Source: Saccostrea cucullata
Lineage: Eukaryota
Assembly (NCBI RefSeq): GCF_032062105.1
Contig: NW_026919274.1
Location: forward strand, 1,054,001-1,118,000
Length of the DNA: 64,000 bases
Direction of reading: 5' to 3'
Under the pieces are notes generated by a model. That model was not told where the DNA came from, made no database searches, and saw nothing but the letters and a program-made list of their open reading frames with translations. Positions 13,062 through 37,808 of the stretch are shown here, piece after piece; positions within the stretch are counted from its first letter, which is position 1, and the number at the start of each line of letters is the position of its first letter. Position numbers and translations under genes: made by a program.

Positions 13062-16000
13062 TCATTTAGTTTGGTTTTTGTGTCCCATCCTCGATAAAAC
13101 GTTTGATACATCATCAGAATGAATAAGAAATAATGTACTGAGTGTTTCTATTTTACTGTTGGAAGTTTTTTCTGGACATGCATCCATCGACTGTTTAACG
13201 GAGTTCGTAGCTCTCTTATAACAAGCGTCCCCTGCTGCCTTTTCCTTGTGTATCTGTACCTCTGAGACCTTTGAAGGACATTGATTTGATGACCTCCCTG
13301 TAGATGGGCGAATCTGTTTTATATCAATTATAGAATGCTTGTTGTTTGTGTCTGAAAGTCCCTTTGATTCTCTATTTTGTGAAGATTCTGTGTTAAGGAT
13401 TGTTTTCTCATCCATAGTGCCATCCTTGGTCACTCCTTCTTTAAACAGATTTATCCTGTTCGATAATAACCCGTCCTTCACTATGATTTTTGTCTTCCGT
13501 GGATGGCGTTTGCGTTGTTCACTTTGGAGTGAGTTTGATGTTTTTTGATTACGAAAACCTTTCGTGGTGGACAAATTTGGTTGCATCAGTTTAGATAAAT
13601 GTGGTCTATGCTGTCTTCTCTTATTTCTCATCGACTGAATGCCAAATCGGTTGTTCCAATTCCGCTGAAACCAATCAGGTATGTACTTGAATGATATTCT
13701 GATTGGCTGAGCTCTATGTCTTCGTAGATACTCTGATCGCCCATATCTTATATACTCCAGACGGAATTTGTTCTGCCTGTAAAAGAAAATTCTTGGTCTG
13801 TTTAAAAGATATGAAAGAGAGATCAAAAAGTTTGTTTGGTTGAGGAATAGACTTTCCACCAAAAACTCTTCGGAAGAAGATACAAGGTTGACATACGATG
13901 TACATTATAAACTCTTTATTTTTATATACATTATAAACTCTTTATTTTTTGAAAGATTTAATTTTTTCCATAAAATTATTCGAACATATGTTTAAACTTA
14001 AGAAAATTTTTTATTAAGAATTAATTTTTACTACAGCTAGGACACTAGTGTAAATTAAGTATGTGTGCATCGAGCAAATCAAGTCATTTCTTCTGTTGTT
14101 ATTTCGTTTAGAAACGTTTCTCAATCCCCAAATGGTCGCTATGGTGAACAATTTTTTTTAAAGTTTACTGCACATGTAAAATTTTAGATTTACAAAGAAA
14201 TTTTAGACTTCTTGCACCTTATACCCGAAGATTGTCATTTAAATCAAATAAAAAAAGTGAGCACGTCTACACCTTTTTTTTAAATAGAGACAATTGTGAT
14301 TGGTAAGGGTTGATAGTATGTAATTTAGATAAACAATGTATATAGGGAATAAAAATATGATTTTGGTAAATATCTTTAGAATGAAATATCAACAGATGGC
14401 TGTTCAAGTCATTTACATGGAAATACGTACCTTTTCTTCCACTTCCTGTAGAATATACACACACATATAATGTTGAAAAACAGCAACATAAATATCCCGC
14501 AGAGGACCACAACGCCAACATCTGTCAAACAGTAAGGTCAAAATAGACTTTTAAAGATAGGGAAGATAAAAATAGACTGCCAAAGTGAAGAAGATAGATA
14601 GAATACATAATAAGTTAAATAGACTATAAAATCAGAAAAGTACAGATAGATTTTATAGTAAGGTCAAAAAAATAGGCAACAAACTAAGGAAGGTAAAACT
14701 ATTCTGCAAAATAAGGAAGGTACAGGTAGGCTTCAAAATAAGGAAGGTACAGATAGGAAACAAAATAAGGAAGGTACAGATAAGGGCTACATTTAAGAAA
14801 GATACAAATAGGCTATGAGATAAGGAAGGCACAGCTAAGCTACATTAAAAGAAAGGTACAGATAGCCTACACAATAAGAAGGATACAGATAGGCTATAAA
14901 ATAAGGAATGTACAGATATGCTACATTATAAGAAAGGCACAGATAGCCTACATTATAAGAAGGATACAGATAGGTTATAAAATAAGGAATGTACAGATAG
15001 TCTACATTAAAAGAAAGGTACAGATAGCCTACACAATAAAAAGGATACAGATAGGTTATAAACTAAGGAATGTACAGATAGCCTACATTATAAGAAAGGT
15101 AAAGATAGCCTATAGTATAAGAAGGATACAAATAGGCTATGAAATAAGGAAGGCACAGATAAACTTCATTATAAGAAAGGTATAGATAGCCTATAGTATA
15201 AAAAGGATACAGATAGGCTATAAAATAAGGAAGGCACAGATAGACTTCACTATAAGAATGGTACAGATAGCCTACATAATAAGAAGGATACAGATAGGCC
15301 ACAAAATAAGGAATGTACAGATAGGAAACAAAATAAGGAAGGTACAGATACTGGCTACATTTGAAAAGGGTACATATAGGCTATAACATAAGGAAGGCAC
15401 AGTTAGGCTACATTATAAGAAAGGTACAGATAGCCTATATTATAAAAAGGATACAGATAGGCTATAGAATAAGGAAGGCACAATTACTGGCTACATTATA
15501 AGGAGGTTACAGATAGACTAATAATAAGGGAGGTTCAGATAGGCTAATAAGCTGCAGAACAAAATAATGATGTATAAATATGCTATAAAATAAGATAAGG
15601 AACAAATATGCTACAAAAAGGAAGACATTTGCTAGAATAGGGAAGGTACTGATAGGCTATTAAATAAAAAGAATTTATAAACGGACTAGAGACAAAAAAA
15701 TTTTTTTAAAAATAGCTACAAAATAGAAAATGTATGAATAAACTTCCAACTAAAAATACACAAATAGACTATTAAGGAAGGTACACACAGGCTAAAAAAT
15801 AAGGAAGGTACAAAATCGTTAAAATTATACAAATAACCTAGATAATAGAGAAGATCAAAACAGGCTTATAAATATGTCATGCAGTTAGGGTTGAATGCCA
15901 ATATCTATATCTTTCTTGTTGGTTGGTCACATATACTATAAAAAATTATTATATTTAACTTTCTTTGATAAAATCTTCAGCATAAGAAATAAATCTCACC

Positions 16001-16108
16001 CACATCTTGTTCTTCACGATACTCAATTTCTGACTGGCCGGACATTATGATCGTGTTTCTATCTCTCTTTGTGACTAATACCACTTTAAATGTTTGTGAA
16101 GTGGAACA
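13062..16108 (-). CDS. Gene B: single-pass membrane protein, paralogue 1 of the trio (long basic/low-complexity tail)
   Basis: Exons 16000-16108 (in-frame ATG at 16045, MSGQSEIEYREEQDV), TM exon 14431-14521 (DVGVVVLCGIFMLLFFNIICVCIFYRKWKKR) and terminal exon 13062-13776 ending KIETLSTLFLIHSDDVSNVLSRMGHKNQTK*. About 283 aa from ATG 16045; further upstream exons are possible. Confidence 0.75.
14530..15860. repeat. 27-bp minisatellite with 81-bp higher-order structure (gene B intron)
   Basis: Unit ~ataagaaaggtacagatagcctacatt. The gataca variant recurs every 81 bp (14801, 14882, 14963, 15044, 15125, 15206, 15287). Confidence 0.85.
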
Positions 16109-16319
16109 CTAATTACATGAAAATAAAATAATTAGGAATGCATAACACTATTCCAGGCACGTTATAATTGTGAATACAAAAGTTCCTTTACAGTGATTTT
16201 TTAAATAGTATTCTTTCCGGATCGTACCATCGGGATGATTAAATGTATTTCAAAATATTTTCCTCTAATTTACTAATAAATGTATTTCGAAGAATATATC
16301 AAACTGAAAGGTATTCTAG

Positions 16320-16572
16320 TTTGTATGCCATTTAACGTCCACCTCTAGAATTTTTCATTCATATGCCAGTGGAAAGCTGCAAACTTTGTCCTATACTCGG
16401 ACCATTGAACAGAGTATTTTTTCGTACCAGCCCCTACTGCGACATGGACATCGATTTATATGGTCTCATCCGAAGAACCGGTCTCCACGTCCAATATTAG
16501 GATGTGAACACGCGTCGTAAAGATCAAATCCTTACCTCACAAAACTTTCTTGCCACAGCGTAACGCGGGCAA
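16320..16572 (-). mobile_element. SINE copy (same family as 1657-1954)
   Basis: Reverse-complement match across tail, core (ggtctcatccgaagaaccggtctcc) and head. Confidence 0.7.
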
Positions 16573-16754
16573 CTTCTTGTTTTGTAGTAGCTGTAACGGG
16601 AAAAATGTGCACAATGATATCAGAGACCAACAATTCTACCTATCATAAAGTATAATATTAGGAGATTAACTTTTTTCTTATGAACACATATTCAATGACT
16701 TTGATGAATAACAATATAACAATATTGCGCCTTTTATTGATTTTCTGTATGAGA

Positions 16755-17900
16755 CTGGTAAACAAGGGATACTTGCTCCTCAGTGGCACCTTATCCCACC
16801 TCTAATGTTTTCAGAGGTCCGTGTTTGCTCTATTCCCGATTCGTATTATTGGAATTGTGAGATATTATTCATAGTGACATAACGTATTGGTATTTTTGCA
16901 TTCATGAAGATACTTTAATAAGAAGCAGAGCAAATGATATCCCATAAAACATAAGAGTGAGGTCAACTGCTAAGGAAAAGTGAGTATCACCTGTAAAGGT
17001 ATCACACCCACAGCTAGCGTAATCCGTTTCTTGATCGGGAAAAACAAAAAGAAAAATACACTATTCATTGTATAAATAATTGCCCAACAATAAGATTGAT
17101 AAACATCAGTGAGCATTTGACTCAACGATAGGTTTTATTTGCTGACACTGTCATTGTTTAGACAAAATAACGCAAAATAATGACCTCAAGGGAGACTGTT
17201 GACATCCTTGTTTCATCAACTAGTTTGCCAATATAGCTTGCGTCGTTTTATAAATTGTTCTTGCGTATCGAAGAAACGGGAGAGATATAAACGCCGTGTG
17301 CAGTTGATGAAGGTATATTGCTGCATTAGTAACAATTGAGAAGTTTTACTGATCACGTTTTTCAAAAAGCTTGGTTGTTAGGTTACCATTAATGTTTTTC
17401 TTCAATTAAAACATTCAAATGTCAGATTCTTGGGGATCTTAAATTTTATTTCAAGCTCACTGTGATTCTTCTATATCTAGTCGACATATGAATGGAAGAA
17501 ACTAATGCTAATTGATATACGTAGTCGATTTAACAACATGTCGAGTTGATTGATCGATTGTATGTTGTTTAACGTCTCTCTCGAGAATTTTTCACTTATA
17601 TGGAGACGCCACCGGTGGAGAGCTTCACATTTTGCCCTATACTAGACACGATCTCATCCGAATGGCCGGTCTCCACGACCTACAGTGAAATATCGAGTTG
17701 TCGAGGTTTTTTTTATTAAGATTGGTTCACAAAATACACAAATAGGTCTGCAAACAACGGGGCGCAATTAGTACCGTAACAGATTGTTTGGAAGACTTGA
17801 TCTCCGAAAACTACAAAGATGCGTCGTCTCAATCCACGGTTCGTAGTCCGTGGCTGCTTGACTGCTTGATAACATCAATTGTAGTATTTTTGAATATTTA
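16755..17900. mobile_element. Penelope-like (Naiad-type) remnants in inverted arrangement, interrupted by a SINE fragment at ~17545-17685
   Basis: Plus-strand tail ggcaccttatcccacctcta..gtccgtgtttgctc at 16760-16860. The minus-strand tail and RT pieces run 16925-17900 and include VFGDQVF..GTNCAP at 17757-17812. Confidence 0.55.
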
Positions 17901-20900
17901 CGCCTCTGTGCTGTGACGTAATGTTTAGCCAATGACAATGTTTGCTTCCATCTTAATTGAGATCAACAGTTGACATCATCATTAAACAAAAATAATTTGT
18001 AAACTGGATGGGTTATTGAAAGATCGTATCAAAGTTCATTTTCCGACTATGCTTTACTAACACTTGTCAATATTTAAATGAGCTACGAAATATTCTCTTT
18101 TCATTCAACCACGGCCAGAATGGGAGAGGATCGTGCATTTTGGCCTTGATTTGTCAATATTGTCAATCAGAATCAGAAACTTAAGCATCGTTTTAATATC
18201 AAATCCATATTACTTATGTTTACAATCAATTATATGAAAAATTAAATTAAAGACTTTGGAGTATATTGTTTAATAAGGTAGAAACACTGATAAAAATTCT
18301 TCTGAACAATAATATTTCTATTTTTGTTTTACGTTTGCTTGCTTACCTCAAAGAACATTTAAGACAGATCCAATTTTTTTTTAAAAATTCAATTTCTTTT
18401 ATTAAAAAAAGCCTTAATTTTAGATGGCTAAACTTACATGAATCAAATAATGAGATTCATCGTTCTTACTTTTTTTGGTCCTCCATAAAGAACGTTTATG
18501 AAAATATCAGACTTCATTTTTTTTAAGCGGATAAAAAGAATCTACTTTCGACTATGAACGAAGAACTTAAAATTTTCTTCTCGATGTTTGTTATGTCATT
18601 AGAAGATTTTCTCATCGAAACACTAGACTTAAGTATAATTTTTTTTATAATCAAGGAAAGCAGATGTTTATAATCGTCACATTAACCAGAAGTAAAGTTA
18701 CAATCTCATGATGTTATTATATGTAATTCGTGGTAATTACTGTCACTTCCTGCATCATGAAATAAGGATAAAACATTTCTTCCTTTTATTTTTTATCAAT
18801 CGAAAATGCATCTAAACTTAATTATATATTGACAAGTATGCAATTATGCAACACGAGTGTTTTGTAAGAAAGTGAAAATGTTAAACATGTACGTTGGGTT
18901 TTTTTATAGGGATAAATAAGATTTTTCTGAAAATCAATTTACCGGAATAATATATCATGTCCTAACATGACAACCCAACAAGATTTTTTTTCAAATCAAT
19001 TTACACTCTATCTTTTTTCAATTTAAAATGTTATTAAGCATATTTAAACTAATCATGCTGAAATTAACTTTGTTAGTAAAAATGCTTATTTCGCATAATT
19101 ACTCGGTGAGTAACAATGGAGATCGTTAATCTTTGAAACAAATATATTACAAGCAATTATATTTAATCTACGTTGTAATTCTTACAGAATTTATTTGTTT
19201 TACGAATAAATAAACAAAAATCAATGAGGCCCTGCTGGATAGATTCTTTCTATCAAAGAAATAGTGGAAAAAGAACTGATTTACCAATTGAAAAAAATAC
19301 TTTTGTACTGTTTGTACTATTCTAAACCACGTAATGTTGATGATATGTAAAAGTGAGTTTACAGACCTTGTGTACTAGCTGCCTTATTTAAATGCAAAGT
19401 TTATAAACAAAATTGTTTTTGTGAAAAATGAAACCTTTCATTTTGCATTATTACTCGGTGAGTAACAAGAAGAAGATCGTTCACACGGAATCTTTGAAAC
19501 AAATATATTACAAACGATTATATTTAATCTACGTTGTAATTCTTACAGAAATTATTTGTTTTACGGAAGTTTAAATAATTTACAAAAATTATTATGTGAA
19601 CGCTAAGCGAAGCTAATTCGAATTAAATTTTGACGCATGCGTAAGGCCAGAATTAATCACAAAGTTATATATAGGTATTTGTGCTATATTTGGAAAAAGT
19701 TAATCACTAAAATCAATGATTTGCTACATGATGTATCAAAGGATTGAAAAAAATGACTTTTGTACTGTCGCATTGTTTACTTCGCATTAGCTGTCGTGTG
19801 AACGCAATTTAACGCATTAAGGAATGTTGAGAAAACAGAAAGGAAATTTCATAAAGTATAATATATTAAATCAAAATTGTTTTAAATGTGATAAAATACT
19901 AAGTTTTAACACAATATCAATTTTAAAATTTCATATTTTATTAAAGAAAATATAAACAAAATTGTTTTTGTGAATGATAATGTGAAACCATTTTTTCAAA
20001 ATCTTTTATTTCTTGCAATAATTTTCAAAATGTAAAGATTGTAAGACATCACTTTTCAAATTTTATATGTCTTAAAGATAATAAATTATTTCAAATAATT
20101 AAATGCTATTAAATAAAGAAATTCAGAAATATGAGCAAACCATTTCAGGCAATATATCTCAATAATTTGATCATTGATCCCATATAATGTTAATACCATG
20201 AGAATTATGGCAACAAAGGTAATATGAGGCTATAAATAATTTCTCATCAGTCATATTTTTTTAATATTCGATTAAAAATGGGGAAAAATACAAATATGAC
20301 AGAGGAAATTCTGTAATTTTAAAAGTTTTTGACCCTGTTCACGTTTCTTTATATGAAGCAACAAGAGTTTCATTGCAATAATATTTCAATATTTAAAGAG
20401 TTTTGTTGCTTGTAATATTTTGTTGAAGAAAAAATTGGTCATAGTGTGAAAAATCAACGTATTTTGTTCACACTAGCATGAAAAGAGTCATTGACCTAAT
20501 TATTTGAAATCAAAATTTAACACAAGAATTATAGGTGTAAAATGTGCAATAGGTGGTTTTTCGTTGTCATCAGTGGAATTTTTTAGTCATCTGAGTAAAG
20601 GTATACCTTAATTTGATTCGCATTAGTTTACTTCGCATTAATTTAGAATTGTGAACAGGGCATTAATGAATTAGTTTAATTCGAATAAGTTTACTGCGCA
20701 TTAATGCCCTGCGGAGATTAATGCCCTGTTCACACGAGAATTTAAGAGTTTTTGAGTTTACATTAAATTACTTCGCATTAGCTCCATCATGTCCATGTGA
20801 ACGCTAAGCGAAGCTAATTCGAATTAAATTCTGACGCATGCGTAATGGCAAAATTTAGTCAAATACCACCTTTCGATGGTCAGCTATAGAAACTTGTGCT

Positions 20901-21069
20901 ATTTTTGAGTGAAAACTAAGGAAAATTTTGTTAATCATTAAAATGTGTGTACAGACACTGTGACATTATGTCAGTTGGAGAAGGTGACGTGATTTGCAAA
21001 TGACGTCATAATAGCCGTGCTGACGCCGGGCTGCAGAAGTAAAATTTTAATTCGCATTAGTTTACTTAA

Positions 21070-22002
21070 CGACGTTCGATCCTGATATTTAAAGTCTTAA
21101 ACTTTTTTGCCAAGTATATTTTTAGTGTCTACAAACATAGCTTAATTAAAATTCAAATAAAAAAATGGGGGTCAATACGCATCTTTTGGCGCTACAGTTC
21201 ATTTAATATGACCTTTTTGCACTGAAATTTGTGTCTTAATTAAAAATTATATTTTTGAACGATTTCCCTCTTATATTTTTATCCAATTAAAGCATTAAAC
21301 AAAATGAACTCTAAGTTTGTTTAAAAAAAGACACTTAAAAGGTGTGACTAAGAAAACATTTTAAATTGCTTCGCATAATCAATTATTTGTCCTTTCTGCA
21401 CTAACAAAAAGTGATTTTTCTGGCATTGAAAATTTAATAGGCAAGAAAATTCTTTTAAAGTCTTAAACTTTTTCTGATTTTAAGCAAATAGGCCAAATTT
21501 ATCTTGAATATTTAGAAAAGAACATCAAAAGCGGGGTATAAAATGTAAATTTTCAGATATTACTACAAAAGTGTCAATTTTACGTTAAAATTGGCTCTAT
21601 TTTTTCCCGGATTTTCAGAATATATTTACTATATTTGTCAAACTTTGTTGATAGAATTCATAAGAAATAATTCAAAAGATATTTTAGAAGCAGCGTAACA
21701 CATTTAACTGCATAAAATAGGTTTTGTGCAACCAGGATGGAAAAATAGAAATCCTAAATTAACAGTAATGTTATAGTTCAAAATTGAAAAACTTATCATT
21801 TTCGTCTAAAAAACCTTCCGCCACAAAATATAGTCCCTATCTTAATTCTACTTGAATGGAATTTATTCGCTGTTTTTTCATTGAATATAGTTAAATTTGC
21901 ACTGTAGAATTCAGATTTAATGTTAGAACTTAAAAATGATGCAGAATTTTATAAATAAAGGACCTGACCAAATTACGCTCAAAATCTCAGGATCGAACGT
22001 CC
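21070..22002. mobile_element. TTAA-targeting (Kolobok-like) MITE
   Basis: TIR (c)gacgttcgatcctga / tcaggatcgaacgtcc with TTAA on both sides. Confidence 0.7.
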
Positions 22003-22012
22003 TTAAGGAAAA

Positions 22013-22152
22013 ATAACAAGTTTATAAACTTCAGTGGGAATTGAAGTGGGTCGGTCACGTGATCAAATCCTGTGAAGGCAGAAGGCCTTCTCGGAAGATT
22101 TGATCATATACCGACCCACTTCAATTCCTTTTGAAGTTTATAAACTTGTTAT
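22013..22152. repeat. Long hairpin, probable terminus of a non-autonomous (tentatively Crypton-like) element
   Basis: Arms ataacaagtttataaacttca..gaagtgggtcggt / accgacccacttc..tgaagtttataaacttgttat, with central aggcagaaggcct. Confidence 0.6.
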
Positions 22153-24835: not shown

Positions 24836-27114
24836 TCATGGCTCACTAACAACTTTTACAGTTTTTAATTTTGAAATGGTGCGTAGAACTTCAGGGGTAT
24901 GTGTTTCAAATAACGTCGTCAGAGTTTTGAGATTGTCCCTCTTCTCCTTTCTGAGTGGTGGTACAAAGCTGTCAGAGAAATTGATGTCCGTGTACGTATT
25001 CCTGTCTTTGGATTCAATTGTCATGTAAGTATCAGATCGGCAGGAGGAGGACAGCGACATAGATTCTGTGACGTTAGAGTAGATGTCGTCTGTTGATCTT
25101 CTAGATATATTTTCTGGCATGTTGTTGTTGTACAGGTGTTGATTCGACTTTCTAGACTGCTCCAACACATTGTATGTACGTTTTCTTTCAATGCCACTTT
25201 GTCTGCGACGTATTTTTTGTCTATGTTATAATAAATAAACTTCGTTATCCCTTGATCATCACTTCAAGATTTTATTTATAATACACGTATAATATATTAT
25301 CAACTATGTTATACTTTTCTTTAAAAAAAGTCGGTATGGTCAATTAGGAGAAATTGTCAGTTTTATATTGAAATAAAGGTTTCGATCGCTACACATTTTG
25401 TATATAAAATATTTACTTTAAATAGATAATGTAAAGATATAGTAATACATAAACAATTAATTGAATACTTTTTCTTCCAAGCGCGGTAGAAGAACAATGT
25501 GAAGACAAAATTAGCAATCACCAGCACGGATACACAAAGCGTTGTTATCATTCCAATACCTTTAAGAAAGTAAATAAAGTGATACATGTATTTATTTTCG
25601 CAGGGTCAAATTTTGGAGGTTTTGGAGTTATGGTTCGTGGGGATTTGATTTTTAAATTTGTGGAGGTTTTAAAAGATAACAAATATAACTTCGTGGAGGA
25701 TATATTTTCTAAGGTGTCATTAAAACACAAAATCATGATATTTTAACACCTCAAAAAGTGATTTTACAGTGTACACAGTTTATTTTGATTTTATTCAATT
25801 AGATGGTGTTGTATATATTTGCTAGGTGACTCACCAAATGTAGATGATGATGCAAATTCAACAGTGCCAACATCAAGATGGTTATATCTTCTTTTGTCAT
25901 CATGCGTGTAAAACAGGTTCTCTAAAGAAGTTTGCTCTGAAAAAAAAAATAAATTTCCTAATTATAGTAGTATGATTATTGGCAATTTGCTATACGAATG
26001 ACTCTTTACGATCCTCAGTATCAAATGAAATTTCCGTATCTTTTTATAGATTCTTTGTAATGCTGCAACTTAATGTTTTTATTAAAAGGAAATTAGTAAT
26101 TAATTCCATACATGTTTGTCACAAGTGAATAATACAAATAAATGAGTATACACATACGAATTTTGTCGAGTTGTCTTTAATACTTTCAAGGTCTTATCCA
26201 TTGTTTGAGTATTTCATTGCTGAGATACGTACCAAATACAGCGACTGTGGATGGAGTTTTTGTGGAACCTGTTGTATTTGGTTTTGCTTCCGAAGACTTC
26301 AAATTTTGCTCTCCTATATATGTAGAGTCATTTATTTGAAAACGAAAAACAAGTACAATTTTACGTAATACTTAAATTCATATTTGTTACAAATTAATGG
26401 TTTAAAAAGTAAAAAGGGTCCCTAATAATAATACATGTCTTTTTTCAGAAAAAGCGTGATAACAGTTAAGATTACAAGCTATCTATACGTATGTATATAA
26501 ACAATAATCAAAGTATGTATTAAACATCCACAACGCACAACCAAGGCGATAGACAATACAATTTCAGTATAAATATTATTTGTCATACCGCAGTTATGTA
26601 TTTCACAAGGCTTTCTATCGAAGAGTTTTGCGTCTGTGCAGCTCGTCAAACAGTCCCTTGCTCTGTACAAATCATCCTCATAACAGCAGCTCCATGAAGA
26701 CCAAGGAGAGTATCCATCATCTTTCTCAGCATGCAATCCTAAACGACGATTAAAATATTTATCATTCATTAACCAAATTTTACTATTTATTTAGTGTATG
26801 TTTCAAAAGCCGTTTTAATTTAACAGATTTGTAAAATACGAGGGTGCCAAGTTCGCTAAAATTAAAATCGCTAAAAATTAATAAAATCGCTAAAATTACA
26901 TCTCATCTATTTCTTTTACAAAATTTTACGAGTTGCTCTGTGTATCTTTCAAAATCCGTTTTTAAATGTAATAGTGCCGGAATAAAACTGGAAACAGTAA
27001 TGCTAAATTGTAACCATGAAACTTACCATTCCAGAGCAACATCATTAAAAGCAATGAATGCAAGGTATGGATCTCCGTGTGAAAGAAATCTATATATGTC
27101 CAAAAGACCAGCAT
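24836..27114 (-). CDS. Gene C: type I membrane protein with signal peptide, TSP1-like domain, S/T-rich stalk, TM and tyrosine-motif tail; paralogue 2
   Basis: Six phase-compatible exons: 27027-27114 (MLVFW..SLLLMMLLWN), 26589-26738 (YSPWSSWSCC..YRARDC..C..C..C), 26233-26313, 25835-25936, TM 25469-25559 (GIGMITTLCVSVLVIANFVFTLFFYRAWKKK) and 24836-25220. Total 897 nt = 298 aa plus stop. Confidence 0.85.
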
Positions 27115-27315: not shown

Positions 27316-27541
27316 TGCTCAGCACTTGAAGTGCAAGTTGTGAGTCCTTCGAATGAGACATTAAAAACCGAGGTCCCGGGTTATGACAGGCGTTGGCACG
27401 AAAAAGATCCCTCACTGCTTAATGGCCCTCATTGTCGAGTAAAGGTCAGAATTTGAAGCTCTTCTCCGGTATATGGTAACGTCTCTACATGAGCGAAAAA
27501 TTCTCGAAAGGGACGTAAAATAACATACATTCAATCAATCA
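27316..27541 (+). mobile_element. SINE copy (5'-truncated or diverged)
   Basis: gaatgagacattaaaaaccgaggtcccg..ggcacgaaaaagatccc core, aaaattctcgaaagggacgtaaa 3' end and (CAAT)n tail. Confidence 0.7.
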
Positions 27542-28254
27542 ATTACCGTACTTTAAGCAAACATGTATGAATAAATTTCAAATTTTTGATTGACCATGAA
27601 AGTTGGAAATTTATGAACAGTAAATCATTTCAATTTTAACAACCAAAGACACAATACTAAGCACAGACTACTAGTAAATTGTTCCGTGTTAAATAAAATT
27701 CAAAGCGCACATCGTATATACGTATTTTGTGATGCAAGCAATTGATTTTTTTTTCCAAAAAAGCTTGTCTGGTTGAAGTTAAATTATATACGTACTCATT
27801 TCCGTTAATTTTTTGGCGTGGGCTATAGCTATGTCTTATCCGTATTTTGAAGACTTTGTTCATAATATTATGATTTTATTAAGACTGATTTGTTTGCAAT
27901 TCATCATAAGAATGAAACTTAAAAGTGAACAGAATTTATGTTAATCTATCCAGTATAAGTTGGGGAGATAAAACTCACCTGGTGACTGGAATGTTAGATT
28001 TTTTTCTCCTTTGAAATTGAACTATGAGATCTTTTTCTTTCAAACCAAGAATTAAAACCAAGGTCTTCTAAAATGCATTTGAAATAGTGAGTCTTTCAAA
28101 CAAAGGCAATATTGTTACAATTTAGCTTTGCCTGCTGAAGCCATAACATATTGTTAAAAAATTCTTTATTCACCTATGATTTAGTTAATCGAAAGTATAG
28201 ACAGTTTGTATATTACCTTTCAACTTCCTAAAAAAATGCAGTAGATTTTTGTTG

Positions 28255-28495
28255 GGATTGAATAATTGATTGTTGTGTAACGTCCCTCTCGAGAAATTTT
28301 CACTCATGGAGACGCCACCACTTGCCGATGGAGAGCTACAAATTTTGTCCTGTACTCAGCACTCATGACCATTGGGCAGAGAGCTTTCTTTTTCGTGCCA
28401 GGAACTACTGAGACACGGGGTCTCGGTTTATACTGCCTCATCCGAAGGACCGGTCTACATGTCCCACAGTGGGACGAACCCGCGACGTAAGGACT
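28255..28495 (-). mobile_element. SINE copy
   Basis: Reverse-complement match to the tail and core of the 1657-1954 family. Confidence 0.7.
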
Positions 28496-28614
28496 TTTTG
28501 TTGGGAATATGTGGCTGTGATAAGGTTAAATATAAATTAATTTAAAATGCACGAAAAAACACGTTTTTTAAAAAGATAATAATATGAGTTAATAAGACAT
28601 CGGTCATGTATGTA

Positions 28615-29671
28615 CGAGCGTCATTCAAAAAATACGTAGACAATGTTCCTCATCGTCACATTATTTTTACAAAGTTAAATATCAGAAGGTTTTTTATATG
28701 TAAAACATGTATTTTATAGATGTGTGAAGTTTCATTCTATTTGATTAAATGGAACTCATGTTAGCCAATTTTAAAAGCAATGTGTATTGTGACCACGGAG
28801 CACGGTTAAAACATTGTAACGTCAAAAACAACGTCGAGAAAGTTTCTCAAACTCACTCTGCCTTTTCATTTTATACATCGTTAGTATCGTATTCCTCATT
28901 CATTAAAACACATCCATAACACTTGACACCTAGTGTGCTAACAATAATTCGAGTACCTTAAGTAAGATTGTCAATGTTTTTAAATTCTTTACCGCGTAAC
29001 TCTGGTTTCACAAGTTTTGCAACAGTGAAGTGCACATCACGTTTCATGACGTTACTAACTCTTTTGACGAGATTTTGAACTAAAATATGTTTCTTTGCAG
29101 ACTGTCCATCGTCGAATTCAAAGTCCTTATCCCTCAAAAATTGTCTTTTCCAATATAAACAAATACACGGTTCATTTTATATATATTTTTCCTGGTTCCT
29201 TCAGCATTTTCGGAGTTTGTTTTAGCAAATTTTTATTGCTACTCGCTGCTCCGTGACGTCCTTCGACGTGATGATATTTTGCTCTTTTTTTAATCAAGAC
29301 TATCTGTCTTTAGAAATTGATATCTTTTAAACAAAGCAATATATTGCTTTAACATTTAGCTTCTGAAATAATAAAACAATACTAAATTTAAGCATTTAAA
29401 TTTTATTTCGTTTAAGGCAATTTTAAAGAGTTATGGCTATAGATATGAAAAGTGTATAATTAGTCAATAACTCATTTTTGACCCTGCTCCGTGACTTCAT
29501 TTTTGCTGTCTTATATCTTTGATAATTTTAATATAAATCACGATAAATTCCAATTTCTTCGCTCAAAATATTTGAATCTGTTGTTAAAATATATATACTA
29601 AATTTGGTTGAATATGACATTAAATAAAAAAAGTTATGACAAAAGTCTACGAAGTTTTTGAATGACCCTCG
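28615..29671. mobile_element. Tc1/mariner-type MITE
   Basis: ~25-bp TIR cgagcgtcattcaaaaaatacgtagac / gtctacgaagtttttgaatgaccctcg, with TA on the left and CA (probably mutated TA) on the right. Confidence 0.6.
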
Positions 29672-30996
29672 CATGTGGATGAAAAAGATATTTTTTTTTA
29701 AAAATGATCATAATGTTATGTATTAGGTGCATTTCAAAATGTAATACTCAAGAATACTTAAATATTGAAAAAATTATTATCAACATAAAACGTGCACACA
29801 ATTCTTTGAAAAAAAGGATGTATACAGTATATTGTAAAAATTATCTACGTATCTCTATTTCCAAAAACATTTTAATTTATTGTTTTGGAATGAAAAAAAA
29901 TCCATCAAAATTGAGCTTAATGAAGAAAAAATATGCGAAATGATTTGACTTCTTGATTTAAGTCCCCCACCCAAAAAATACTAGATTTTATTTTTTCTTT
30001 GGTTTCTAATGTGAAAAACAACAAAATTTAGTAAATTGACCTTTTTTTTCGTTTAGTGACTTGTACCAGAGGAAATTATCATTTCGGATAATTTTTCAAT
30101 GACCCAATTTTTATAAATTTATAAATACACATGTGAATAGCATAGATGTATAAAAATATAGAAATTTCACGAAGGGACCTTGCTCTACATGAACAATACA
30201 GATCCGCACATAAGGTTTTTCGCACAAATTAAGGTCACATTTTTTATGTAGTAAACTTAATATCTAACTTCATTTCGAGACATAACCATTATATGTATAA
30301 CATATCTCATGTCAAAGGTACATGTTCTTTAAAATCATTATTGTAAGTTTTCAAAGTTGATGTTTTACAGTTAGACTTCATCTATAATGGTTTGATGTTA
30401 CATTCTGTATGATTCTGTCAAAGGTATATGAAATTAATTAATCGCGCTTTCTTTGATACTACCGGGTATTTAGTTGAAATTTTCCAATTGACTTCTTAGC
30501 GATGAGTATTTTTCTAAGTACTTTACTATTTTAGCCGTGGGCAAGGATGACAAACAAACAGGACTGGAGTAATTTGTTGTTACAGAACTTGACATGACTT
30601 GAACAGGAAAAACAGAACATTAAATATCGTGTTTTAATTTGATACTTTTTCGATATAAGTATTATATATTAATCATACTTGTTAATGAAACGCCTGTATA
30701 TCCTACATGTATGGTTTATGAAAAAAAATATCAAAAAGGGGAAAATTGTTGATGACTTTTTATTACTTTAATACTTAATTATTTAAATATAATGATTGCG
30801 AAAACATGAAATTTTGTATTATTAATATTTGAGAAAAGAATAAAATTGACACTTCTTAAGAAAGTTTTTATACAGACAGCTTATAAAGGACAGTCAAAGT
30901 AGTTAAGAAGATACTTATGTTGCTTACAAAATAGAGAAAGAAAATATTCTGCGTGTCAATATTTAACTCTTAATTGCATTTAACTCTTAATTGCAG

Positions 30997-31061
30997 ATCA
31001 CGTCTCCATATGAGTGAAAAATTCTCGAGAGGGACGTTAAACAATATACATGTACAATCAA
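30997..31061 (+). mobile_element. Severely 5'-truncated SINE 3' end with TSD
   Basis: cgtctccatatgagtgaaaaattctcgagagggacgttaaacaa flanked by 12-bp TSD tcttaattgcag (30985-30996, 31062-31073). Confidence 0.75.
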
Positions 31062-31756
31062 TCTTAATTGCAGCTCAAAAGAGATAGATAAATGTGATCG
31101 TGAAGTCAAGTACAAAAGAGCATAGATTACTTTAAAATCAGTGTTCTTTTTGGCGGTCCTATTTTTTATTTTCATACGACAGATAACATTTTTCGTTCAG
31201 ATTATGTGTACTGTCAACTTAGAAGAGCATGGCATTTTTCTTTGAAAATCTTTTTCCTCTTAATATATCTTGTTTTTTGAAAATGTAGTCCCAGCTGTGA
31301 AACATCAACTTTATATAAATAACTTATTGTCTGACACTTGAAAAAAATCTAACATCACAATGAAGGCATGAATTTCCTCGTTTGATCACAAAAATATTGA
31401 GTAAAACTGATACTTGTTCAGCCATACAATATGAAGAATATAAATTTGACGTCAAGTATTCATGTAATTTGAAATATTAGGCTTAATGCCTGTATCCTCA
31501 CCCCAAGCAAGATAATGAAGATTACAAGTCTTCTAAAATAAGGTTTTAAAATATACTTTTAAAAAATATTGAAATTTTAAGAATAACCCTATGTCCTATT
31601 TCATTTGATGATAGAGTCGTGCACAAAAATTACAAATGCACTATTCCCAAATCAAAATATCGGTCAAAGAAACTGTAAATCACTCAACAAATGTCTTTTA
31701 TTCACTATATTCAGGATATGCTTAGTCATATAAAGTATAATAATAACCATCGAAAC

Positions 31757-34700
31757 TCATCGGACACCTGTTTCAATGGCTTTCAATCTGGAAACTGTGC
31801 GATTAACATCATTCGAGTGCAATGAAAATAGTGTCGTTAGGGTTTTCAATCTGTCTCTTTTAATGGCTCTGAGCGGTGGCACACTTTCTTTAGAAATTTC
31901 CGTTTCCTTTGCTTTCGTTACAGATTGGATTGTTGCGTATCTATCGGACTGAAAGCTTATACGTGAATCCCGGACGTCGGAGTAAACATGCCTAGTCATG
32001 CGCTCGAGTGCACTGTATGAATTATTGGTGTTCATTTCAATCGTGCTTTGTCTTCGACGCACTTCCTGTCTGTACAGAAAGAAATAGTTGATTTAATATT
32101 GGCTTTGCCTAAATGCTTATATGTACTGGACAAAAGCAAATAAACGTTGGTTTTAATTATAAATGTCTAACTCCAATGTAGGAAATGCCTACAAAAATTA
32201 CATTTATCTCTCTTCATGTAAAAGTTTTGAAATCATTAAAACTTATTAATATGACAGTAATACCCACACTTAAAAGTGTTTACATCTTCATTTAAGCTAC
32301 TTGAGTAATGAAGAACCATGATATAAATTATCAAATAATCCACATAAAAGTATATTCCTTACAAAAGAACTTTTGGACAATTTGAAATCACAGGATTTTA
32401 CCAAAATCAACAGCTTTTAAAAAAACTTTTTAAACGACTTTTCAACTTAATACACAAACATATGCATTCTCCATGATAAATTAAAGTCCAATTTTTTTGA
32501 TATCATTGACAGCTGCCTTTTCAATAAAAATGAAACTCGTAATTTTACTTACCTTGTCATTGGTCATTTGCATAATTATTTTGTTAAAAACATTCTGATT
32601 GTACATACAATTACTCTGAAGTTGACATAAAAAAAGATGATTGAGTTTCTGATTGACAGTACATGTATCTATGTTGTTTTCGGAGACCAGGTCTGTTGGA
32701 ATTGCCCTGGGTACCAATTGCGCCCCGTTATAAGCAGACCTATTTTTGTATTCATATGAAGCAGAATTTGTTGAAAATCTTATCCATGAAATAGGGGATG
32801 GGGTAAAAGCATTACTATTGCATTTTTTTTTAAAAGGAACAATTTAGCTGTATGTAAGTATTGCTTTACAGTCAGCTTCACCCTCCTCCTCTAAAAATAT
32901 AAATTATAACAATCTTTGTCTGGTGTATATTTCTTCACTTCACCCTCTCTGGCCTACGTTTCACCTTTGGGTAGAGGATGGACAGTCTGGCTCAAACTCA
33001 TGAATAGAGAGTACCATTGAATATAAAAGAGATTTTGAACAATTTCTAGTTCAATGGTCAAGGTAAGAAAACAAACGTCTTTTCATGAGAAAACATTATT
33101 CAGATATCGAGTATTTACTAGTATTCTCTCCCATTGACTTTATATGGCTCAAACGATATCCATAAAGTACCAAAGGCTTGAGGGTGTTCAGAGACAGATA
33201 ATCATAGATATTGATGTCAAAACACGTTTCTGTGTAAAGTCTTTGTACAAAGCACACTTTGACTCCTTATGGCTCAGTTTGGCTCACATTTCACTCAAAG
33301 AGTATTCCCATGAATAAGGGTCTGACCAGAGTTTTAAATAATTTTTAAGGATGAAAGACCTAAGTCAAAATATTTTCTTTTGTTTTTAAACACTTCTTAG
33401 TCTTGGCGTAACACAAATCAAACCTATTGTCTGACACCTGAAAACCAGTGATCAGTGATTGTCACAGGCTGTGAGTGCCATATGCAGACTGGGCGCGACT
33501 AGTTTCCCGAAATGGGGACCTTTCATTATGTATTATTTAGAGTACGAAATTCCTACTGTATCGGAGATACAGGACTGGACTTGAGGCGAGAGCGACAGCT
33601 CGAACCGCGCCCCGCCCTGTATCTCCGAAACAATAGGAAACGAGTATTCTAAATGACTTGTGACATGACTTTTCTTATGACCTCACTAATTTATATGTGT
33701 ATTTGGGTCATTCTATAGCCAATCAGATGATTTTTCAGAAAGTGAAATTTCGCACCCCATTTTTATCAGTCGCAACTGAAATGCCGAGTAAGGTGGAGGC
33801 GAAGGTATCTATAAATTTAAATAATTTTAAAAATGGGAGGTGATATGCCCCGGTAAATGTATAATGTTTTTTTTCCAGAAAATTAATTTATATTTGACTG
33901 CGTAGGTTTTTTCCTCTGTTCCTCTTGCAAAGGAAAAATGTGTAAAACATTTTGATACATAAGAAACATATGAAAATGAAGCAAAAAAAGGTTTAGGGGA
34001 TTATATTCTGAGAGAAATATCCTACAATACCATCCACCAGTCGTCATATTACAATATTACTGGCTCTAATCTGAAATGCACAGATGAAAAAAGGGAGCAT
34101 ATATTACCTTCGTGTTTGAAAAAAATGTAAGCGTAACCAAGGCAAGTCAAGTGCTGAATAGCCCCCTTTGATTTTTCGTTTTGGCCCTCTTAAATTAGAT
34201 CTATATTTGCCAAACTTGGATATCCTTTATAATTGTTCATAATCAATATATAACGATCACACATAGTGTCAGAGCTGATTATGATTCTACCCCCACAAAA
34301 TACGATTTTCCTTTTTTTGGTCAAAGAAAATCGCGAACTGTGAAATGTGAACTGCTTCACTCCCTCCTTTCTTTTCCCACCATAGGTAATTATACTTTGT
34401 AAAATTATATTCTAAATTTACCTCAATTTTTCATCAAATACATGTAATAACATAATAATAATGTTATGCCTTTTGATTGATTCTCGTGTCTGTCTCATTT
34501 AAGATACGGATACAGCTTTCAGTCATCGCTAAAAATAAAATGTTTTCTATCGAAGTTATTGTACAGTTTCTGCTCATTTGCATGAGAAACGCCCTCGAAA
34601 AAGTGTTCCGTATCGCAGTTATTGTACGGTTGACATCAAAGGAAAACTCGCCGGGTCATGTCACAAATATTTTTGTAAATGTCACCTATTCAAATTTGTA

Positions 34701-37700
34701 ATATCACTAATTCAAATTAAATAGGTGATATCGCCTATTCAAATAGGTGATATCCCTTATTCGAATAAGTGATATCACCCATGAAGTCCGAACAAGTGAT
34801 ATCACCTAATAATTTCCAATGAATGATATCACCAAAAATGGCCTCAAACGTATCCTGGGGGAAAAGGAATCTTATTTTCTTCTAATGAAGAGTAAAGTCC
34901 TCCTTTATGGAGAAAAAATAGAAAAATGAATAGAAATCCTTTGAATGACGTTTTGATTGTTTAACCTTTTGGCATGTGTGTTTTGCAAAAATAATTAAGG
35001 TTAACTTTAAAAGAGAAAAATAATCTTGGAATAGTCTGTTGTGAAAGCTTCATAACACAGTGTACTTTTAGTAACCATGACCCAGTGGGCTAGAGTATTG
35101 CCACAAGAGCAAACAAAGTTTTACATACGAACGTGTATGAATCTTCTCAAGAACCACTGGGAAAAAGCAGTGGAAAATAATTTGGAAGTTTGATACAAAG
35201 TTAAGACGAAAAACCTGTTCTTACAAAATATTGCTCTTCCTACCGTTTTAATGAGATTCTAGTAAGACAGCACAAATAGGCTATACTAGGCTATATATAA
35301 TCCTTTTTATCTGTTTTTGATTTCCTAAAACCGTGTTGCCATAATAGCTGGAAATAGACACAATCAACACTCGTTATCTCGAATTACTTGAGACCAATAA
35401 CAAAAGCTTCGAGATATCCGATGATTAGATATTACCTCAAAATCATATATAGGTTGAGTTTTTAGAACCAGATTATTATTTTTTTCTAAGGGGGGGGAGC
35501 AGTTTTTGACTTTTGCTGTGGCCTTCAACTCGACCTTCAGATATATCGACGACGTATATTGTCAATTAACAATGGTAATTTCCATTCCTACGTCGATACG
35601 ATATATCCAGGAGAGCTTGAGATAAAAGATACCACAGAGTCTGACACATCTGTTTCATACTTGGATATTTTACTTGAAAAAGACGTTAATGGTAACCTAA
35701 CAACCAAGTTATATGATAAACGTGATGACTTTAACTTTTCTATCGTCAACTTCCCTTACTTATGCAGCAATATACCTTCATCACCTGTATACGGAGTGTA
35801 TATATCTCAGTTGATTCGATACGCAAGAGCATGCTCTACGTACGAACAACTTCTAAAACGGGGTAAATTATTGAAAAGCAAGTTCATGAAACAAGAATAT
35901 CAGCAGTCTCTTTTAAAGTCATCATTTCGCAAGTTCTATGGTCGATACAATGACCTTGTCAGCAAATACAATTTATCATTGAGTCAAATGCTGACTGACG
36001 TTTTTCATACCAATTGTTCGTCCATTATTCATACACTGAATTGACGACGGATTTTTCTGTTATTTCACGATCATGACAATGAGCACACGGCGAGTGTGAC
36101 CGGTCAGCAAGGGATGCTCACTCCTCCATGGCACCTGCTCCCACCTCTGATGTTTCGGATGTCCGTGTTTGCTCTGCTCCTATTTTGTATTGTTTTATGG
36201 ACTTTGATATTGAATACTGTTTGTTATCTCCATATCCATCCCAATGGTGAATATGAAAATTCCGAAACCAAATACACACATCTCTTATCCTTTCCCAAAA
36301 ATGAATAAGCTACATTAAAATGTTGGCGGAGTTCTTGGAACCAGAATTTTTTGGTTAAAACAATGAGAAAACATTTTTCGACCCCCATTTGACATCCCCG
36401 GGAAAAAATGATAATTCAGATATCTTTTTTGCTTATGACAAACCAATCAACTTCCAAATAAATAATTATAAGGTTACTGCATAAAATGTTAGAGGAGCTG
36501 GGAACCAACCCTTAGTAGAAAAACATCATTATTGACCCCCTGGATGAAATTAGAAATTCAAATTCTGAAATCTTATTTATATATCCATGACATCACCAAT
36601 CATCTTTCAAAAGATTATTATGTTATTGCGCAAAATGTAGGAGGAGCTCTGGAAACCAGACTTTTGTATTTAAAAAAACTAATTTTTAATATACCCGGTT
36701 TGCCCTCGGTGTGAAAATAAAAATTCGAAAGAAAACTTACTGCACATCTACAAGATGTTTTTTTTATTTTTATTTATTTATTTATTTATATTTTTTGTTA
36801 TTATTTGACCTTTTTATTGTTTGTGTAGGTCGCATCGAAACGTATTGAAGCAATTAAAAAGTAGTAAAAGATTCAATAAAACACAAATCAAAACTGAAAA
36901 TACTGAGTATCAAGAATAAATAATTGTCAAATTTAATGAGAGAAATTTTCGGAATCATGCTCAAAAATATCACTTTATTTCATATGCTAGACTAATTTAC
37001 ATTACGGCACTAAAATAAAAAGGCATGCACTTAATTCAAAAACTCAATATCAGATAAAAGAATGAACTTCAGCTCCTATTTTATACTTTTAACTTTTTTT
37101 AGTCTTAGTTTTCATCTTTCATTTATAGTGCAGAACTTTGGAAAAAAACTTTAAGTACTGAGACTGCATTGTTAAGGTGAATCATAAATGATTGTAAACT
37201 ACAAGTGTTTTGTCCAAATGATTATTTACCTCTGATGTTTTGGAGGTCCGTGTTTGCTATGCTCCTGATTTGAATTATTTGAATGGACTTTTGAGTATGA
37301 ATACTGTATGTTATCTCTAATATATTTCATTTTGGTTACGCTTATTTTCAAGTTATGTGAAATATTTACCTTTTCTTCCAAGCGCGGTAGAAGAAGAAAG
37401 TAAAGATAAGGTTAACCATTACAAGTGCAGACAGACATATAGTTGTTATCAACCCGGCACCTGAAAAAAAGTTACAGATATGTGTTATTATATTACATAA
37501 CAGGAACATTTATACAGAATTGTTGTTTATTTCATAAAAATAAATAATCATCCTTATTTTTTTTTTTTTTACATTTTTTATTAGTTATGGTAAGAATAGA
37601 AATGATCAACTTCATACAAAATTTAATTGAAAGAATGAAAAAAATTTCATTACAAGGCTTTGAAGCTCAGTATCTTGATTTTTATAAATTTAAAATACAT

Positions 37701-37808
37701 AAGTAAAATACTTACCAAATTCAGTGGGTACAATAAAGTCTTTGCTACCCATATCACGTTCATTATTTTGTTTAGTTTTATCCTCTGTCTCATTAGACAT
37801 GTTCACAG
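31757..37808 (-). CDS. Gene D: single-pass membrane protein with short ectodomain and tyrosine-motif tail; paralogue 3
   Basis: Exons 37716-37808 (ATG at 37800, MSNETEDK..PTEF), TM 37370-37460 (GAGLITTICLSALVMVNLIFTFFFYRAWKKR) and terminal 31757-32069 (QEVRRRQS..DRLKTLTTLFSLHSNDVNRTVSRLKAIETGVR*). 162 aa from ATG 37800; upstream exons are uncertain. Confidence 0.8.
32330..36240 (+). mobile_element. Penelope-like (Naiad-type) RT fragment split by ~2.7 kb of nested insertions
   Basis: 32698-32790 reads GIALGTNCAPL*ADLFLYSYEAEFVENL. Translation resumes at ~35513 with AVAFNSTFRYIDDVLSINN..YLDI..LYDKRDDFNF..YGVYISQLIRYARAC, ending at 36044 with no C-terminal GIY-YIG. The 3' tail runs 36085-36230. 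Confidence 0.75.
33535..33655. repeat. Long hairpin within the nested insertion
   Basis: atttagagtac..ttcctactgtatcggagatacagg / cctgtatctccgaaacaataggaa..gtattctaaat. Confidence 0.6.
36240..36760. repeat. Degenerate ~160-bp satellite-like units (HINE-type)
   Basis: Motif atgt(a/t)ggaggag..ggaacca recurs at ~36320, 36486 and 36635. Confidence 0.5.

What the first reader, a model, noticed from the sequence alone, without database searches (positions are those of the whole stretch)
13062..37808. Tandem trio of unannotated single-pass membrane paralogues: candidate invertebrate receptor/adaptor signalling cluster
Seen in sequence: genes B, C and D lie on the same strand. Each has a TM exon of exactly 91 nt (phase 1 to phase 2) ending FYR(A/K)WKK(R/K), followed by one terminal tail exon starting (R/K)Q and ending in a shared motif. 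Their ectodomains differ strongly: TSP1 plus stalk in C, apparently only 15-30 aa in B and D. Two tails are rich in YxxL/I/V motifs. Inference: a locally expanded family combining a ligand-binding member with adaptor-like members, analogous to vertebrate receptor/ITAM-adaptor pairs. The ORF track misses the relationship because the exons are short.
Basis: partly seen in the sequence, partly recalled or inferred. Interest (0 to 1): 0.82.

Follow-up and report, generated by a model that had tools for sequence, protein, structure and literature searches.

The report
Oyster-only membrane adaptor-like gene trio
Three neighbouring genes of the hooded oyster encode related single-pass membrane proteins with conserved tyrosine motifs in their tails; they belong to an uncharacterised family found only in oysters, look like signalling adaptors, and show no evidence of pairing as receptor and adaptor.

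Summary
On the minus strand of this Saccostrea cucullata window lie three paralogous genes, B, C and D. Each has a 91-nt transmembrane (TM) exon in phase 1 to 2, ending FYR(A/K)WKK. A single terminal tail exon follows, starting (R/K)Q and ending in a shared KTLTTLF..HS.DV motif.

The genes are not unannotated. RefSeq lists all three as "uncharacterized protein" (LOC134283572, LOC134283749, LOC134283583).

A profile search of 1.84 billion proteins found 18 relatives. Every one whose source I traced is from an oyster: Saccostrea, Ostrea or Crassostrea/Magallana. Seven more family members in three other species have the same 91-nt exon. C. gigas also has a tandem trio, and S. echinata keeps the order cadherin-D-C-B.

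Family-wide features:
- an invariant Asn in the middle of the TM segment;
- no charged TM residue;
- an NxS/T sequon near the N-terminus of the short forms;
- a disordered tail whose best-conserved residues are three tyrosines;
- a predicted C-terminal helix.

The extra domain of C is only weakly thrombospondin type 1 (TSP1)-like. Its ITAM spacing is absent from the S. echinata orthologue.

My best reading is an oyster-specific family that resembles transmembrane phosphotyrosine adaptors, with C as the form carrying an ectodomain. The proposed receptor/ITAM-adaptor pairing is not supported. Function is untested.

The parts
16000..16045 (-). Gene B exon 1 (coding part): Met plus a 15-aa acidic N-terminus, phase-1 donor
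   Evidence: The peptide of RefSeq model P0004 was located here, followed by a GT donor.
14431..14521 (-). Gene B TM exon, 91 nt, phase 1 to 2, ending FYRKWKK; it has a CVC near the cytoplasmic end
13062..13776 (-). Gene B terminal tail exon: 237 aa, basic and tyrosine-poor, ending in the shared ETLSTLF..HSDDV motif, plus stop
27027..27114 (-). Gene C exon 1 (coding part): hydrophobic, signal-peptide-like N-terminus, phase-1 donor
   Evidence: It matches the first exon of the S. echinata orthologue P0006 and is intact in the haplotig. That it acts as a signal peptide is inferred.
26589..26738 (-). Gene C Cys-rich exon, 150 nt, phase 1 to 1: WSSWS, RAR and six Cys (TSP1-like, below threshold)
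   Evidence: There is no Pfam hit.
26233..26313 (-). Gene C stalk exon 1, 81 nt, phase 1 to 1, rich in Ser/Thr/Pro
   Evidence: Present in RefSeq model P0005 and in P0006.
25835..25936 (-). Gene C stalk exon 2, 102 nt, phase 1 to 1
25469..25559 (-). Gene C TM exon, 91 nt, phase 1 to 2, ending FYRAWKK
24836..25220 (-). Gene C terminal tail exon: 127 aa plus stop, with four YxxL/I/V motifs and the shared C-terminal motif
24983..25027 (-). YMTI-x7-YTDI in the C tail (ITAM spacing)
   Evidence: Present in both S. cucullata haplotypes. It reads YTTI-x7-YISS in S. echinata.
37716..37800 (-). Gene D exon 1 (coding part): Met plus a 27-aa hydrophilic N-terminus with an NET sequon at residues 3-5, phase-1 donor
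37370..37460 (-). Gene D TM exon, 91 nt, phase 1 to 2, ending FYRAWKK
31757..32069 (-). Gene D terminal tail exon: 103 aa plus stop, with three YxxL/V/I motifs and the shared C-terminal motif

Best explanation
B, C and D are real, expressed-type genes of an uncharacterised family of small single-pass membrane proteins found only in oysters. The N-terminus faces outward and the C-terminus inward. The three copies arose by tandem duplication before the Saccostrea species split.

Each protein consists of:
- a TM helix with an invariant central Asn and an FYxxW(K/R)K stop-transfer sequence;
- a disordered cytoplasmic tail whose best-conserved residues are tyrosines. The motifs are PYNxL, (D/E)(I/V)Y(S/A)(D/N)(I/V)RES and YxTI, plus NTYxxL in many members;
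- a conserved C-terminal amphipathic helix.

I infer that the tails are phosphorylated on these tyrosines and recruit SH2-domain proteins. They would then work like vertebrate transmembrane adaptor proteins such as SIT, PAG, SCIMP and GAPT.

D is the minimal form, with a 28-aa ectodomain carrying a glycosylation sequon. C is the same scaffold with a TSP1-like module and a mucin-like stalk added, so it could sense a ligand and signal by itself. B has kept the TM segment and the C-terminal helix, has lost the tyrosine motifs and has gained a long basic tail.

Shown here: gene structure, paralogy, restriction to oysters, conservation and predicted topology. Inferred: phosphorylation, SH2 recruitment and any role in immunity.
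For: Gene models:
- RefSeq proteins P0001 (D), P0004 (B) and P0005 (C) use exactly the junctions found in the window.
- The S. echinata orthologue P0006 gives the full 298-aa form of C. The window's exon lengths add up to the same 298 codons.

Splicing and selection:
- A cDNA contig of a C. gigas paralogue, from gill RNA (PMC11171025), aligns to the genome as exons that include the 91-nt TM exon.
- The 91-nt exon is present in 7 of 7 further members from S. echinata, C. gigas and O. edulis.
- dN/dS is 0.12-0.56.

Distribution:
- The profile search of 1.84e9 representative proteins gave 18 hits. The ten looked up include named records only from oyster species.
- Pfam finds nothing.
- Within this genome the family is confined to this locus and its haplotig.
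- The order cadherin-D-C-B is kept in S. echinata, and C. gigas has a tandem trio.

Conserved residues and structure:
- In the disordered tail the columns identical in at least 8 of 11 members are three Tyr (11/11, 10/11 and 8/11), a nearby Arg and Ser, and one Ile and one Val.
- AlphaFold2 of D predicts a TM plus juxtamembrane helix at residues 30-74 (mean pLDDT 87-96 over residues 31-60), a disordered stretch at 75-135 and a C-terminal helix at 136-159.

Topology:
- The N-termini are acidic, with no hydrophobic signal sequence.
- The stretch after the TM segment carries a net charge of +6 to +7.
- The short forms keep an NxS/T sequon near the N-terminus.

Leads only:
- Language-model neighbours of D include the adaptors SCIMP and GAPT and the poxvirus phosphotyrosine scaffold A36R, at scores of 0.82-0.86.
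- Oysters have a working ITAM-Syk axis, CgIgR-CgSyk (PMC6994640).
- From general knowledge, an acidic residue followed by I/V at position -1 before Tyr fits the preference of Src-family kinases.
Against:
- There is no detectable homology to any adaptor family.
- C and D lack a juxtamembrane Cys palmitoylation motif.
- YxxL/I/V motifs also serve as endocytic sorting signals.
- B has none of the conserved tyrosine motifs.
- The language-model similarities are all below the 0.9 level at which they would count as more than leads.
Confidence: 0.45

Rival explanations
1. C is a ligand-binding receptor that assembles in the membrane with B and/or D, which act as signalling adaptors, as in vertebrate receptor/ITAM-adaptor pairs (DAP12, FcR gamma).
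For: - The three genes are adjacent paralogues with homologous TM helices.
- The central TM Asn is invariant. From general knowledge, such a residue can drive helix-helix association.
- C has an ectodomain, and B and D have almost none.
Against: - No TM segment has an acidic or basic residue.
- C itself has the most tyrosine motifs.
- B and D lack an ITAM, and B lacks all YxxL/I/V motifs.
- The short ectodomains have no Cys for disulfide-linked dimers.
- In O. edulis one gene appears to hold both kinds of 5' exon.
Confidence: 0.12
2. The tyrosine motifs are YxxPhi sorting signals rather than phosphorylation sites. On this view the family consists of trafficking or endocytic membrane proteins (cargo receptor, or mucin-like surface protein) without signalling function.
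For: - All conserved motifs fit Yxx(L/I/V).
- The tails are short and disordered.
Against: - The residues upstream of the best-conserved Tyr, acidic followed by I/V at -1, are conserved as well. Binding to adaptor-complex mu subunits does not require them; this last point is general knowledge.
- Three or four such motifs per tail is unusual for sorting alone.
Confidence: 0.2
3. They are small accessory subunits of a multi-pass channel, transporter or receptor, as KCNE and FXYD proteins are. The conserved polar TM face (Asn, Thr-Thr) would contact the partner.
For: - The architecture fits: no signal peptide, an N-terminal glycosylation sequon, one TM segment and a basic juxtamembrane stretch.
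- The TM segment is the best-conserved part of the protein, with an invariant Asn.
Against: - It does not explain the conserved tyrosines, the C-terminal helix or the TSP1-like ectodomain of C.
- No partner gene stands out in the cluster. The neighbours are a cadherin gene and a PDI-like thioredoxin gene.
Confidence: 0.1

Closest known systems
Vertebrate transmembrane adaptor proteins (SIT, PAG/Cbp, LAT, NTAL, LIME, TRIM, SCIMP, GAPT)
   Same: - A very short ectodomain without a cleavable signal peptide; in SIT it is also glycosylated.
- One TM helix.
- A disordered cytoplasmic tail with several conserved tyrosine motifs.
- SCIMP and GAPT are among the language-model neighbours of D.
   Different: - There is no sequence homology.
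- C and D have no juxtamembrane CxxC/CxC palmitoylation motif; only B has a CVC.
- This family has an invariant TM Asn and a conserved C-terminal helix, neither of which is a defining feature of these adaptors.
- One member carries a TSP1-like ectodomain.
- The family is restricted to oysters.
ITAM adaptors DAP12 / FcR gamma / CD3 zeta, and the oyster ITAM receptor CgIgR (PMC6994640)
   Same: - The C tail has YxxI-x7-YxxI.
- Several Crassostrea members have YxxI-x9-YxxL.
- Oysters have a Syk that binds an ITAM receptor.
   Different: - There is no TM Asp and no ectodomain Cys.
- The spacing varies from 5 to 9 residues.
- The second Tyr is lost in the D lineage, and the motif is broken in C of S. 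echinata.
- There are no Ig domains.
Thrombospondin type 1 repeat (Pfam PF00090)
   Same: - The 49-aa exon of C has WSxWS, RxR and six Cys.
- 7 of the 11 weak PDB sequence hits are TSP1 repeats: C8 alpha and beta, C7, F-spondin and UNC5A.
- All of the top language-model neighbours are TSP_1 clusters.
   Different: - There is no Pfam hit even at E = 10.
- The PDB E-values are only 0.2-10.
- The exon lacks the CSxTCG hairpin.
- My AlphaFold2 model was unusable, with a mean pLDDT of 55.6.

Membership tests
ITAM-bearing signalling adaptor (DAP12/FcR gamma type) | Acidic residue in the TM helix that pairs with a basic TM residue of the receptor | tested here: not met
   The TM segments of B, C and D and of all 14 aligned relatives contain no D, E, K or R. 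The only invariant polar residue is Asn.
ITAM-bearing signalling adaptor (DAP12/FcR gamma type) | Conserved YxxL/I-x6-8-YxxL/I in the tail | tested here: not met
   It is absent from B and D. It is present in S. cucullata C (24983-25027), but the S. echinata orthologue reads YTTI-x7-YISS. Other members have a spacing of 5 or 9.
ITAM-bearing signalling adaptor (DAP12/FcR gamma type) | Ectodomain cysteine for disulfide-linked dimers | tested here: not met
   There is no Cys in the 16-aa N-terminus of B or the 28-aa N-terminus of D.
Transmembrane adaptor proteins (functional class, not a homology family) | Short ectodomain, single TM segment, and a long tail without a domain but with several conserved Tyr motifs | tested here: met
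   This holds for D and, apart from the ectodomain, for C. It does not hold for B, which has no conserved Tyr motifs.
Transmembrane adaptor proteins (functional class, not a homology family) | Juxtamembrane Cys palmitoylation motif (raft-targeted subgroup) | tested here: not met
   C and D have no Cys at the cytoplasmic end of the TM segment. B has CVC just before FYRKW.
Transmembrane adaptor proteins (functional class, not a homology family) | Tyrosine phosphorylation and SH2 recruitment | not testable with these tools
   This needs biochemistry.
TSP1 repeat (PF00090) | Significant match to the family profile | tested here: not met
   There is no TSP_1 hit for the exon or for P0006 at E up to 10.
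TSP1 repeat (PF00090) | WxxW, RxR and six-Cys layer motif, and the fold | tested here: inconclusive
   The motifs are present and invariant across three species. The weak PDB hits and the Atlas neighbours are mostly TSP1 repeats. My own model had a mean pLDDT of 55.6 and was not usable.

The most novel reading that the evidence does not exclude
An oyster-specific membrane signalling module that evolved independently of vertebrate immunoreceptors. The TSP1-bearing member C would bind a microbial or matrix ligand. It would oligomerise with its short paralogues through the invariant TM Asn, and would signal to Syk-, Csk- or SHP-type SH2 proteins through the conserved tyrosine motifs, including an ITAM-like pair.
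Probability: 0.1. Interest if true: 0.75.

Novelty: new variant of a known kind. Interest (0 to 1): 0.4.

Why it matters
Bivalves depend on innate immunity, yet few of their membrane-proximal phosphotyrosine signalling components are known. One published example is the CgIgR-CgSyk axis.

This finding defines a lineage-restricted family with a very regular gene structure and with tyrosine motifs more conserved than the rest of the tail. It also gives precise exon coordinates and names orthologues in farmed species such as C. gigas, C. virginica and O. edulis. That makes a concrete candidate set for membrane adaptors in oysters.

If the tyrosine motifs turn out to be sorting signals, the family is simply an orphan group of membrane proteins.

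Tried and rejected
There is no RNA evidence for S. cucullata itself.
- Pfam scans of the tails, the Cys-rich exon and eight full-length relatives gave only sub-threshold noise.
- AlphaFold2 of the Cys-rich exon, with a 4-row alignment, gave a mean pLDDT of 55.6 and a helical model. I discarded it and ran no fold search.
- Complex prediction of C (residues 62-130 of P0005) with D (residues 12-80 of P0001) scored 0.02 and gave no verdict. It counts neither for nor against binding.
- The look-up of encoding contigs found no record for P0001; the window's own genome is left out of that tool.
- The word-based profile search with alignment A4 added only one new fragment.
- A paper search for the LOC and XP identifiers of the C. 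gigas, C. virginica and O. edulis members found nothing.
- I considered trans-species polymorphism at D and rejected it. Site patterns follow the species tree, with 35 sites unique to S. echinata against 9 and 15 unique to the two alleles.
- Joined spliced models were not sent to any search tool. Exons were searched by reference, and full-length proteins came from the databases.
Full report
**Source of the window.** The window is contig C1411:1054001-1118000 of a 1.17-Gb assembly. Exact protein matches identify the organism as the hooded oyster Saccostrea cucullata. The window has 31.5% G+C and no N.

**Check of the observation.** A six-frame motif search found FYR.WKK exactly three times, all on the minus strand. 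The three exons are B 14521-14431, C 25559-25469 and D 37460-37370. Each is 91 nt long. Each has a polypyrimidine tract and an AG acceptor, a GT donor, two leading bases that complete a codon, and two trailing bases, so the phase runs 1 to 2.

Downstream of each lies one open tail exon, entered after an AG. Its first base completes the R or K codon, and the next codon is Q. These exons are B 13776-13062 (237 aa), C 25220-24836 (127 aa) and D 32069-31757 (103 aa). All three tails end in a shared motif, (K/E)TL(T/S)TLF..H(S/T)..V.

The similarity is not chance. The C tail finds the D tail in the whole genome at E = 2e-11. B against D gives two collinear BLASTP matches, in the TM segment (E = 2e-6) and in the C-terminal motif (E = 2e-5).

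**Gene models.** The genes are not unannotated.
- D is RefSeq LOC134283583 (162 aa, P0001).
- B is LOC134283572 (283 aa, P0004).
- C is LOC134283749 (236 aa, P0005).

All three are named "uncharacterized protein". The three models use exactly the TM-to-tail junctions above. The first coding exons of B and D are at 16045-16000 and 37800-37716. They give 16 and 28 residues in front of the TM segment and have no hydrophobic signal sequence.

The RefSeq model of C starts at an ATG just beyond the donor of the Cys-rich exon, so it lacks that exon. The S. echinata orthologue (XP_061167686.1, 298 aa, P0006) has a hydrophobic first exon, the Cys-rich exon, two stalk exons, the TM exon and the tail. 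The window holds all of these intact, with matching phases:
- 27114-27027 (88 nt)
- 26738-26589 (150 nt)
- 26313-26233 (81 nt)
- 25936-25835 (102 nt)
- 25559-25469 (91 nt)
- 25220-24836 (385 nt)

The total is 897 nt, which is 298 codons plus a stop. Exons were searched by reference, and full-length proteins were taken from the databases.

**RNA evidence.** There is indirect evidence. Logan contigs of about 1 kb carry the uninterrupted 153-aa ORF of a C. gigas paralogue. One of them, SRR27190615, comes from gill RNA of a Vibrio challenge study (PMC11171025). It aligns to the C. gigas genome as four exons, one of which is the 91-nt TM exon. A B-like protein also occurs on cDNA-like contigs.

**The family.** A profile of TM segment plus tail (alignment A2) was searched against 1.84 billion representative proteins. 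It found 18 proteins at E <= 0.001. Ten of them were looked up. The named records are all from oysters: S. cucullata, S. echinata, Ostrea edulis, Crassostrea/Magallana gigas, C. angulata and C. virginica. The unnamed ones are Logan contigs, some of which map to C. gigas. All named records read "uncharacterized protein". Pfam has no family for any of them, and no paper mentions the gene identifiers.

Within S. cucullata the family is confined to this locus and an allelic haplotig, C10795. In S. echinata the order cadherin-D-C-B is kept, and B is present there but not annotated. C. gigas has a tandem trio on one strand. The 91-nt TM exon, with AG and GT at the same places, is found in all seven additional members examined. 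dN/dS is 0.12-0.56 for the TM and tail exons, so the genes are under purifying selection.

**What is conserved.** Across 14 members the invariant residues are an Asn in the middle of the TM helix and F, Y and W of FYxxW(K/R)K. No TM segment has a charged residue.

In an 11-member alignment of the non-B tails, the region between the basic juxtamembrane stretch and the C-terminal motif is poorly conserved. The columns identical in at least 8 of 11 sequences are:
- three tyrosines, at 11/11, 10/11 and 8/11;
- the R and S of a (D/E)(I/V)Y(S/A)(D/N)(I/V)RES motif;
- the I of YxTI;
- one V.

Many members also have NTYxxL, 5-9 residues after YxxI. AlphaFold2 with the family alignment predicts for D a helix at residues 30-74 (mean pLDDT 87-96 over residues 31-60), disorder at 75-135 and a helix at 136-159 over the C-terminal motif.

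The short forms have acidic N-termini, a net charge of +6 to +7 after the TM segment, and a conserved NxS/T sequon within about the first eight residues (NET, NGT, NQS, NLS, NES). This argues for an N-out, C-in topology with a glycosylated stub.

**The ectodomain of C.** The 49-aa exon keeps WSxW(S/T), RxR and six Cys in S. cucullata (both haplotypes) and in S. echinata, and five of those Cys positions also in an O. edulis exon. Pfam TSP_1 is not hit.

A profile search of PDB sequences gives only E = 0.2-10. However, 7 of the 11 hits are TSP1 repeats, from complement C8 alpha, C8 beta and C7, F-spondin and UNC5A. The language-model and structure neighbours in the ESM Atlas are almost all TSP_1 families, at scores below the level that counts as evidence. 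My own model was unusable. The exon is therefore TSP1-like, but this is not proven.

**The ITAM.** S. cucullata C reads YMTI-x7-YTDI (24983-25027), and the haplotig reads YTTI-x7-YTDI. The S. echinata orthologue reads YTTI-x7-YISS. The D lineage has no second Tyr, and other members have a spacing of 5 or 9. What the family shares is a set of single Tyr motifs. It does not share a canonical ITAM.

**Interpretation.** The architecture is a stub ectodomain, one TM segment, and a disordered tail in which tyrosines are the conserved residues. Acidic residues and I/V stand just before the best-conserved Tyr. This architecture is that of transmembrane adaptor proteins.

The language-model neighbours of D include SCIMP, GAPT and poxvirus A36R (leads only). 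Oysters do have an ITAM-Syk pathway (PMC6994640). I therefore favour a role as a phosphotyrosine scaffold (0.45). In that reading C is the version with an ectodomain, and B is a divergent member that has lost the tyrosine motifs.

- the TM segments have no complementary charges;
- the supposed receptor has the best signalling motifs;
- the supposed adaptors have no ITAM;
- the complex prediction gave no verdict.

Oligomerisation through the invariant Asn remains possible.

**Verdict.** This is an uncharacterised, oyster-restricted family with an adaptor-like design. It is of moderate interest, and its function is untested.

Noticed in passing
window 14672-15546: A minisatellite with a 27-bp unit (81-bp higher-order unit), about 32 copies, lies in intron 1 of gene B. 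It produces the spurious 79-aa ORF at 15063-15302.
   Followed up: partly
window 31063-32175 against haplotig C10795 27901-28975: The two S. cucullata haplotypes are unusually divergent around the D tail exon. Nucleotide identity is 78% over about 1.1 kb, and dS within the exon is 0.23, about the same as to S. echinata (0.24). Flanking blocks are 93-99% identical. Site patterns still follow the species tree.
   Followed up: partly
window 32070-37369 (D intron 2); ORFs at 35559-36308 (+): The intron between the TM exon and the tail exon of D is 5.3 kb here, against about 0.8 kb in S. echinata. It holds repeat-like ORFs with copies elsewhere in the window (54351-54602, 7459-7797). They have no Pfam match.
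   Followed up: partly
L015:7727-7876 (O. edulis): A TSP1-like exon, 42% identical to that of C, lies about 2 kb upstream of the first exon of the single D-like O. edulis gene, on the same strand. No TM or tail exon of its own was found. It may be an alternative 5' exon, which would suggest that C and D arose from one gene with two alternative starts.
   Followed up: partly
L013:19546-22497 (S. echinata): An intact-looking orthologue of gene B (exon 1, 91-nt TM exon and the start of the tail) is present in S. echinata, but no gene is called there.
   Followed up: partly
window 26530-26586: The RefSeq model of C (P0005) starts at an ATG immediately after the donor of the Cys-rich exon and reads 18 hydrophobic residues of what the orthologue treats as intron. 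This is either an alternative first exon or a modelling artefact.
   Followed up: no
window 44479-44865 (-), 46531-49076 (+), 61802-63760 (+): The flanking genes are a cadherin gene on the minus strand, with a LINE-type reverse transcriptase insertion in an intron, and a PDI-like gene with thioredoxin domains on the plus strand.
   Followed up: partly
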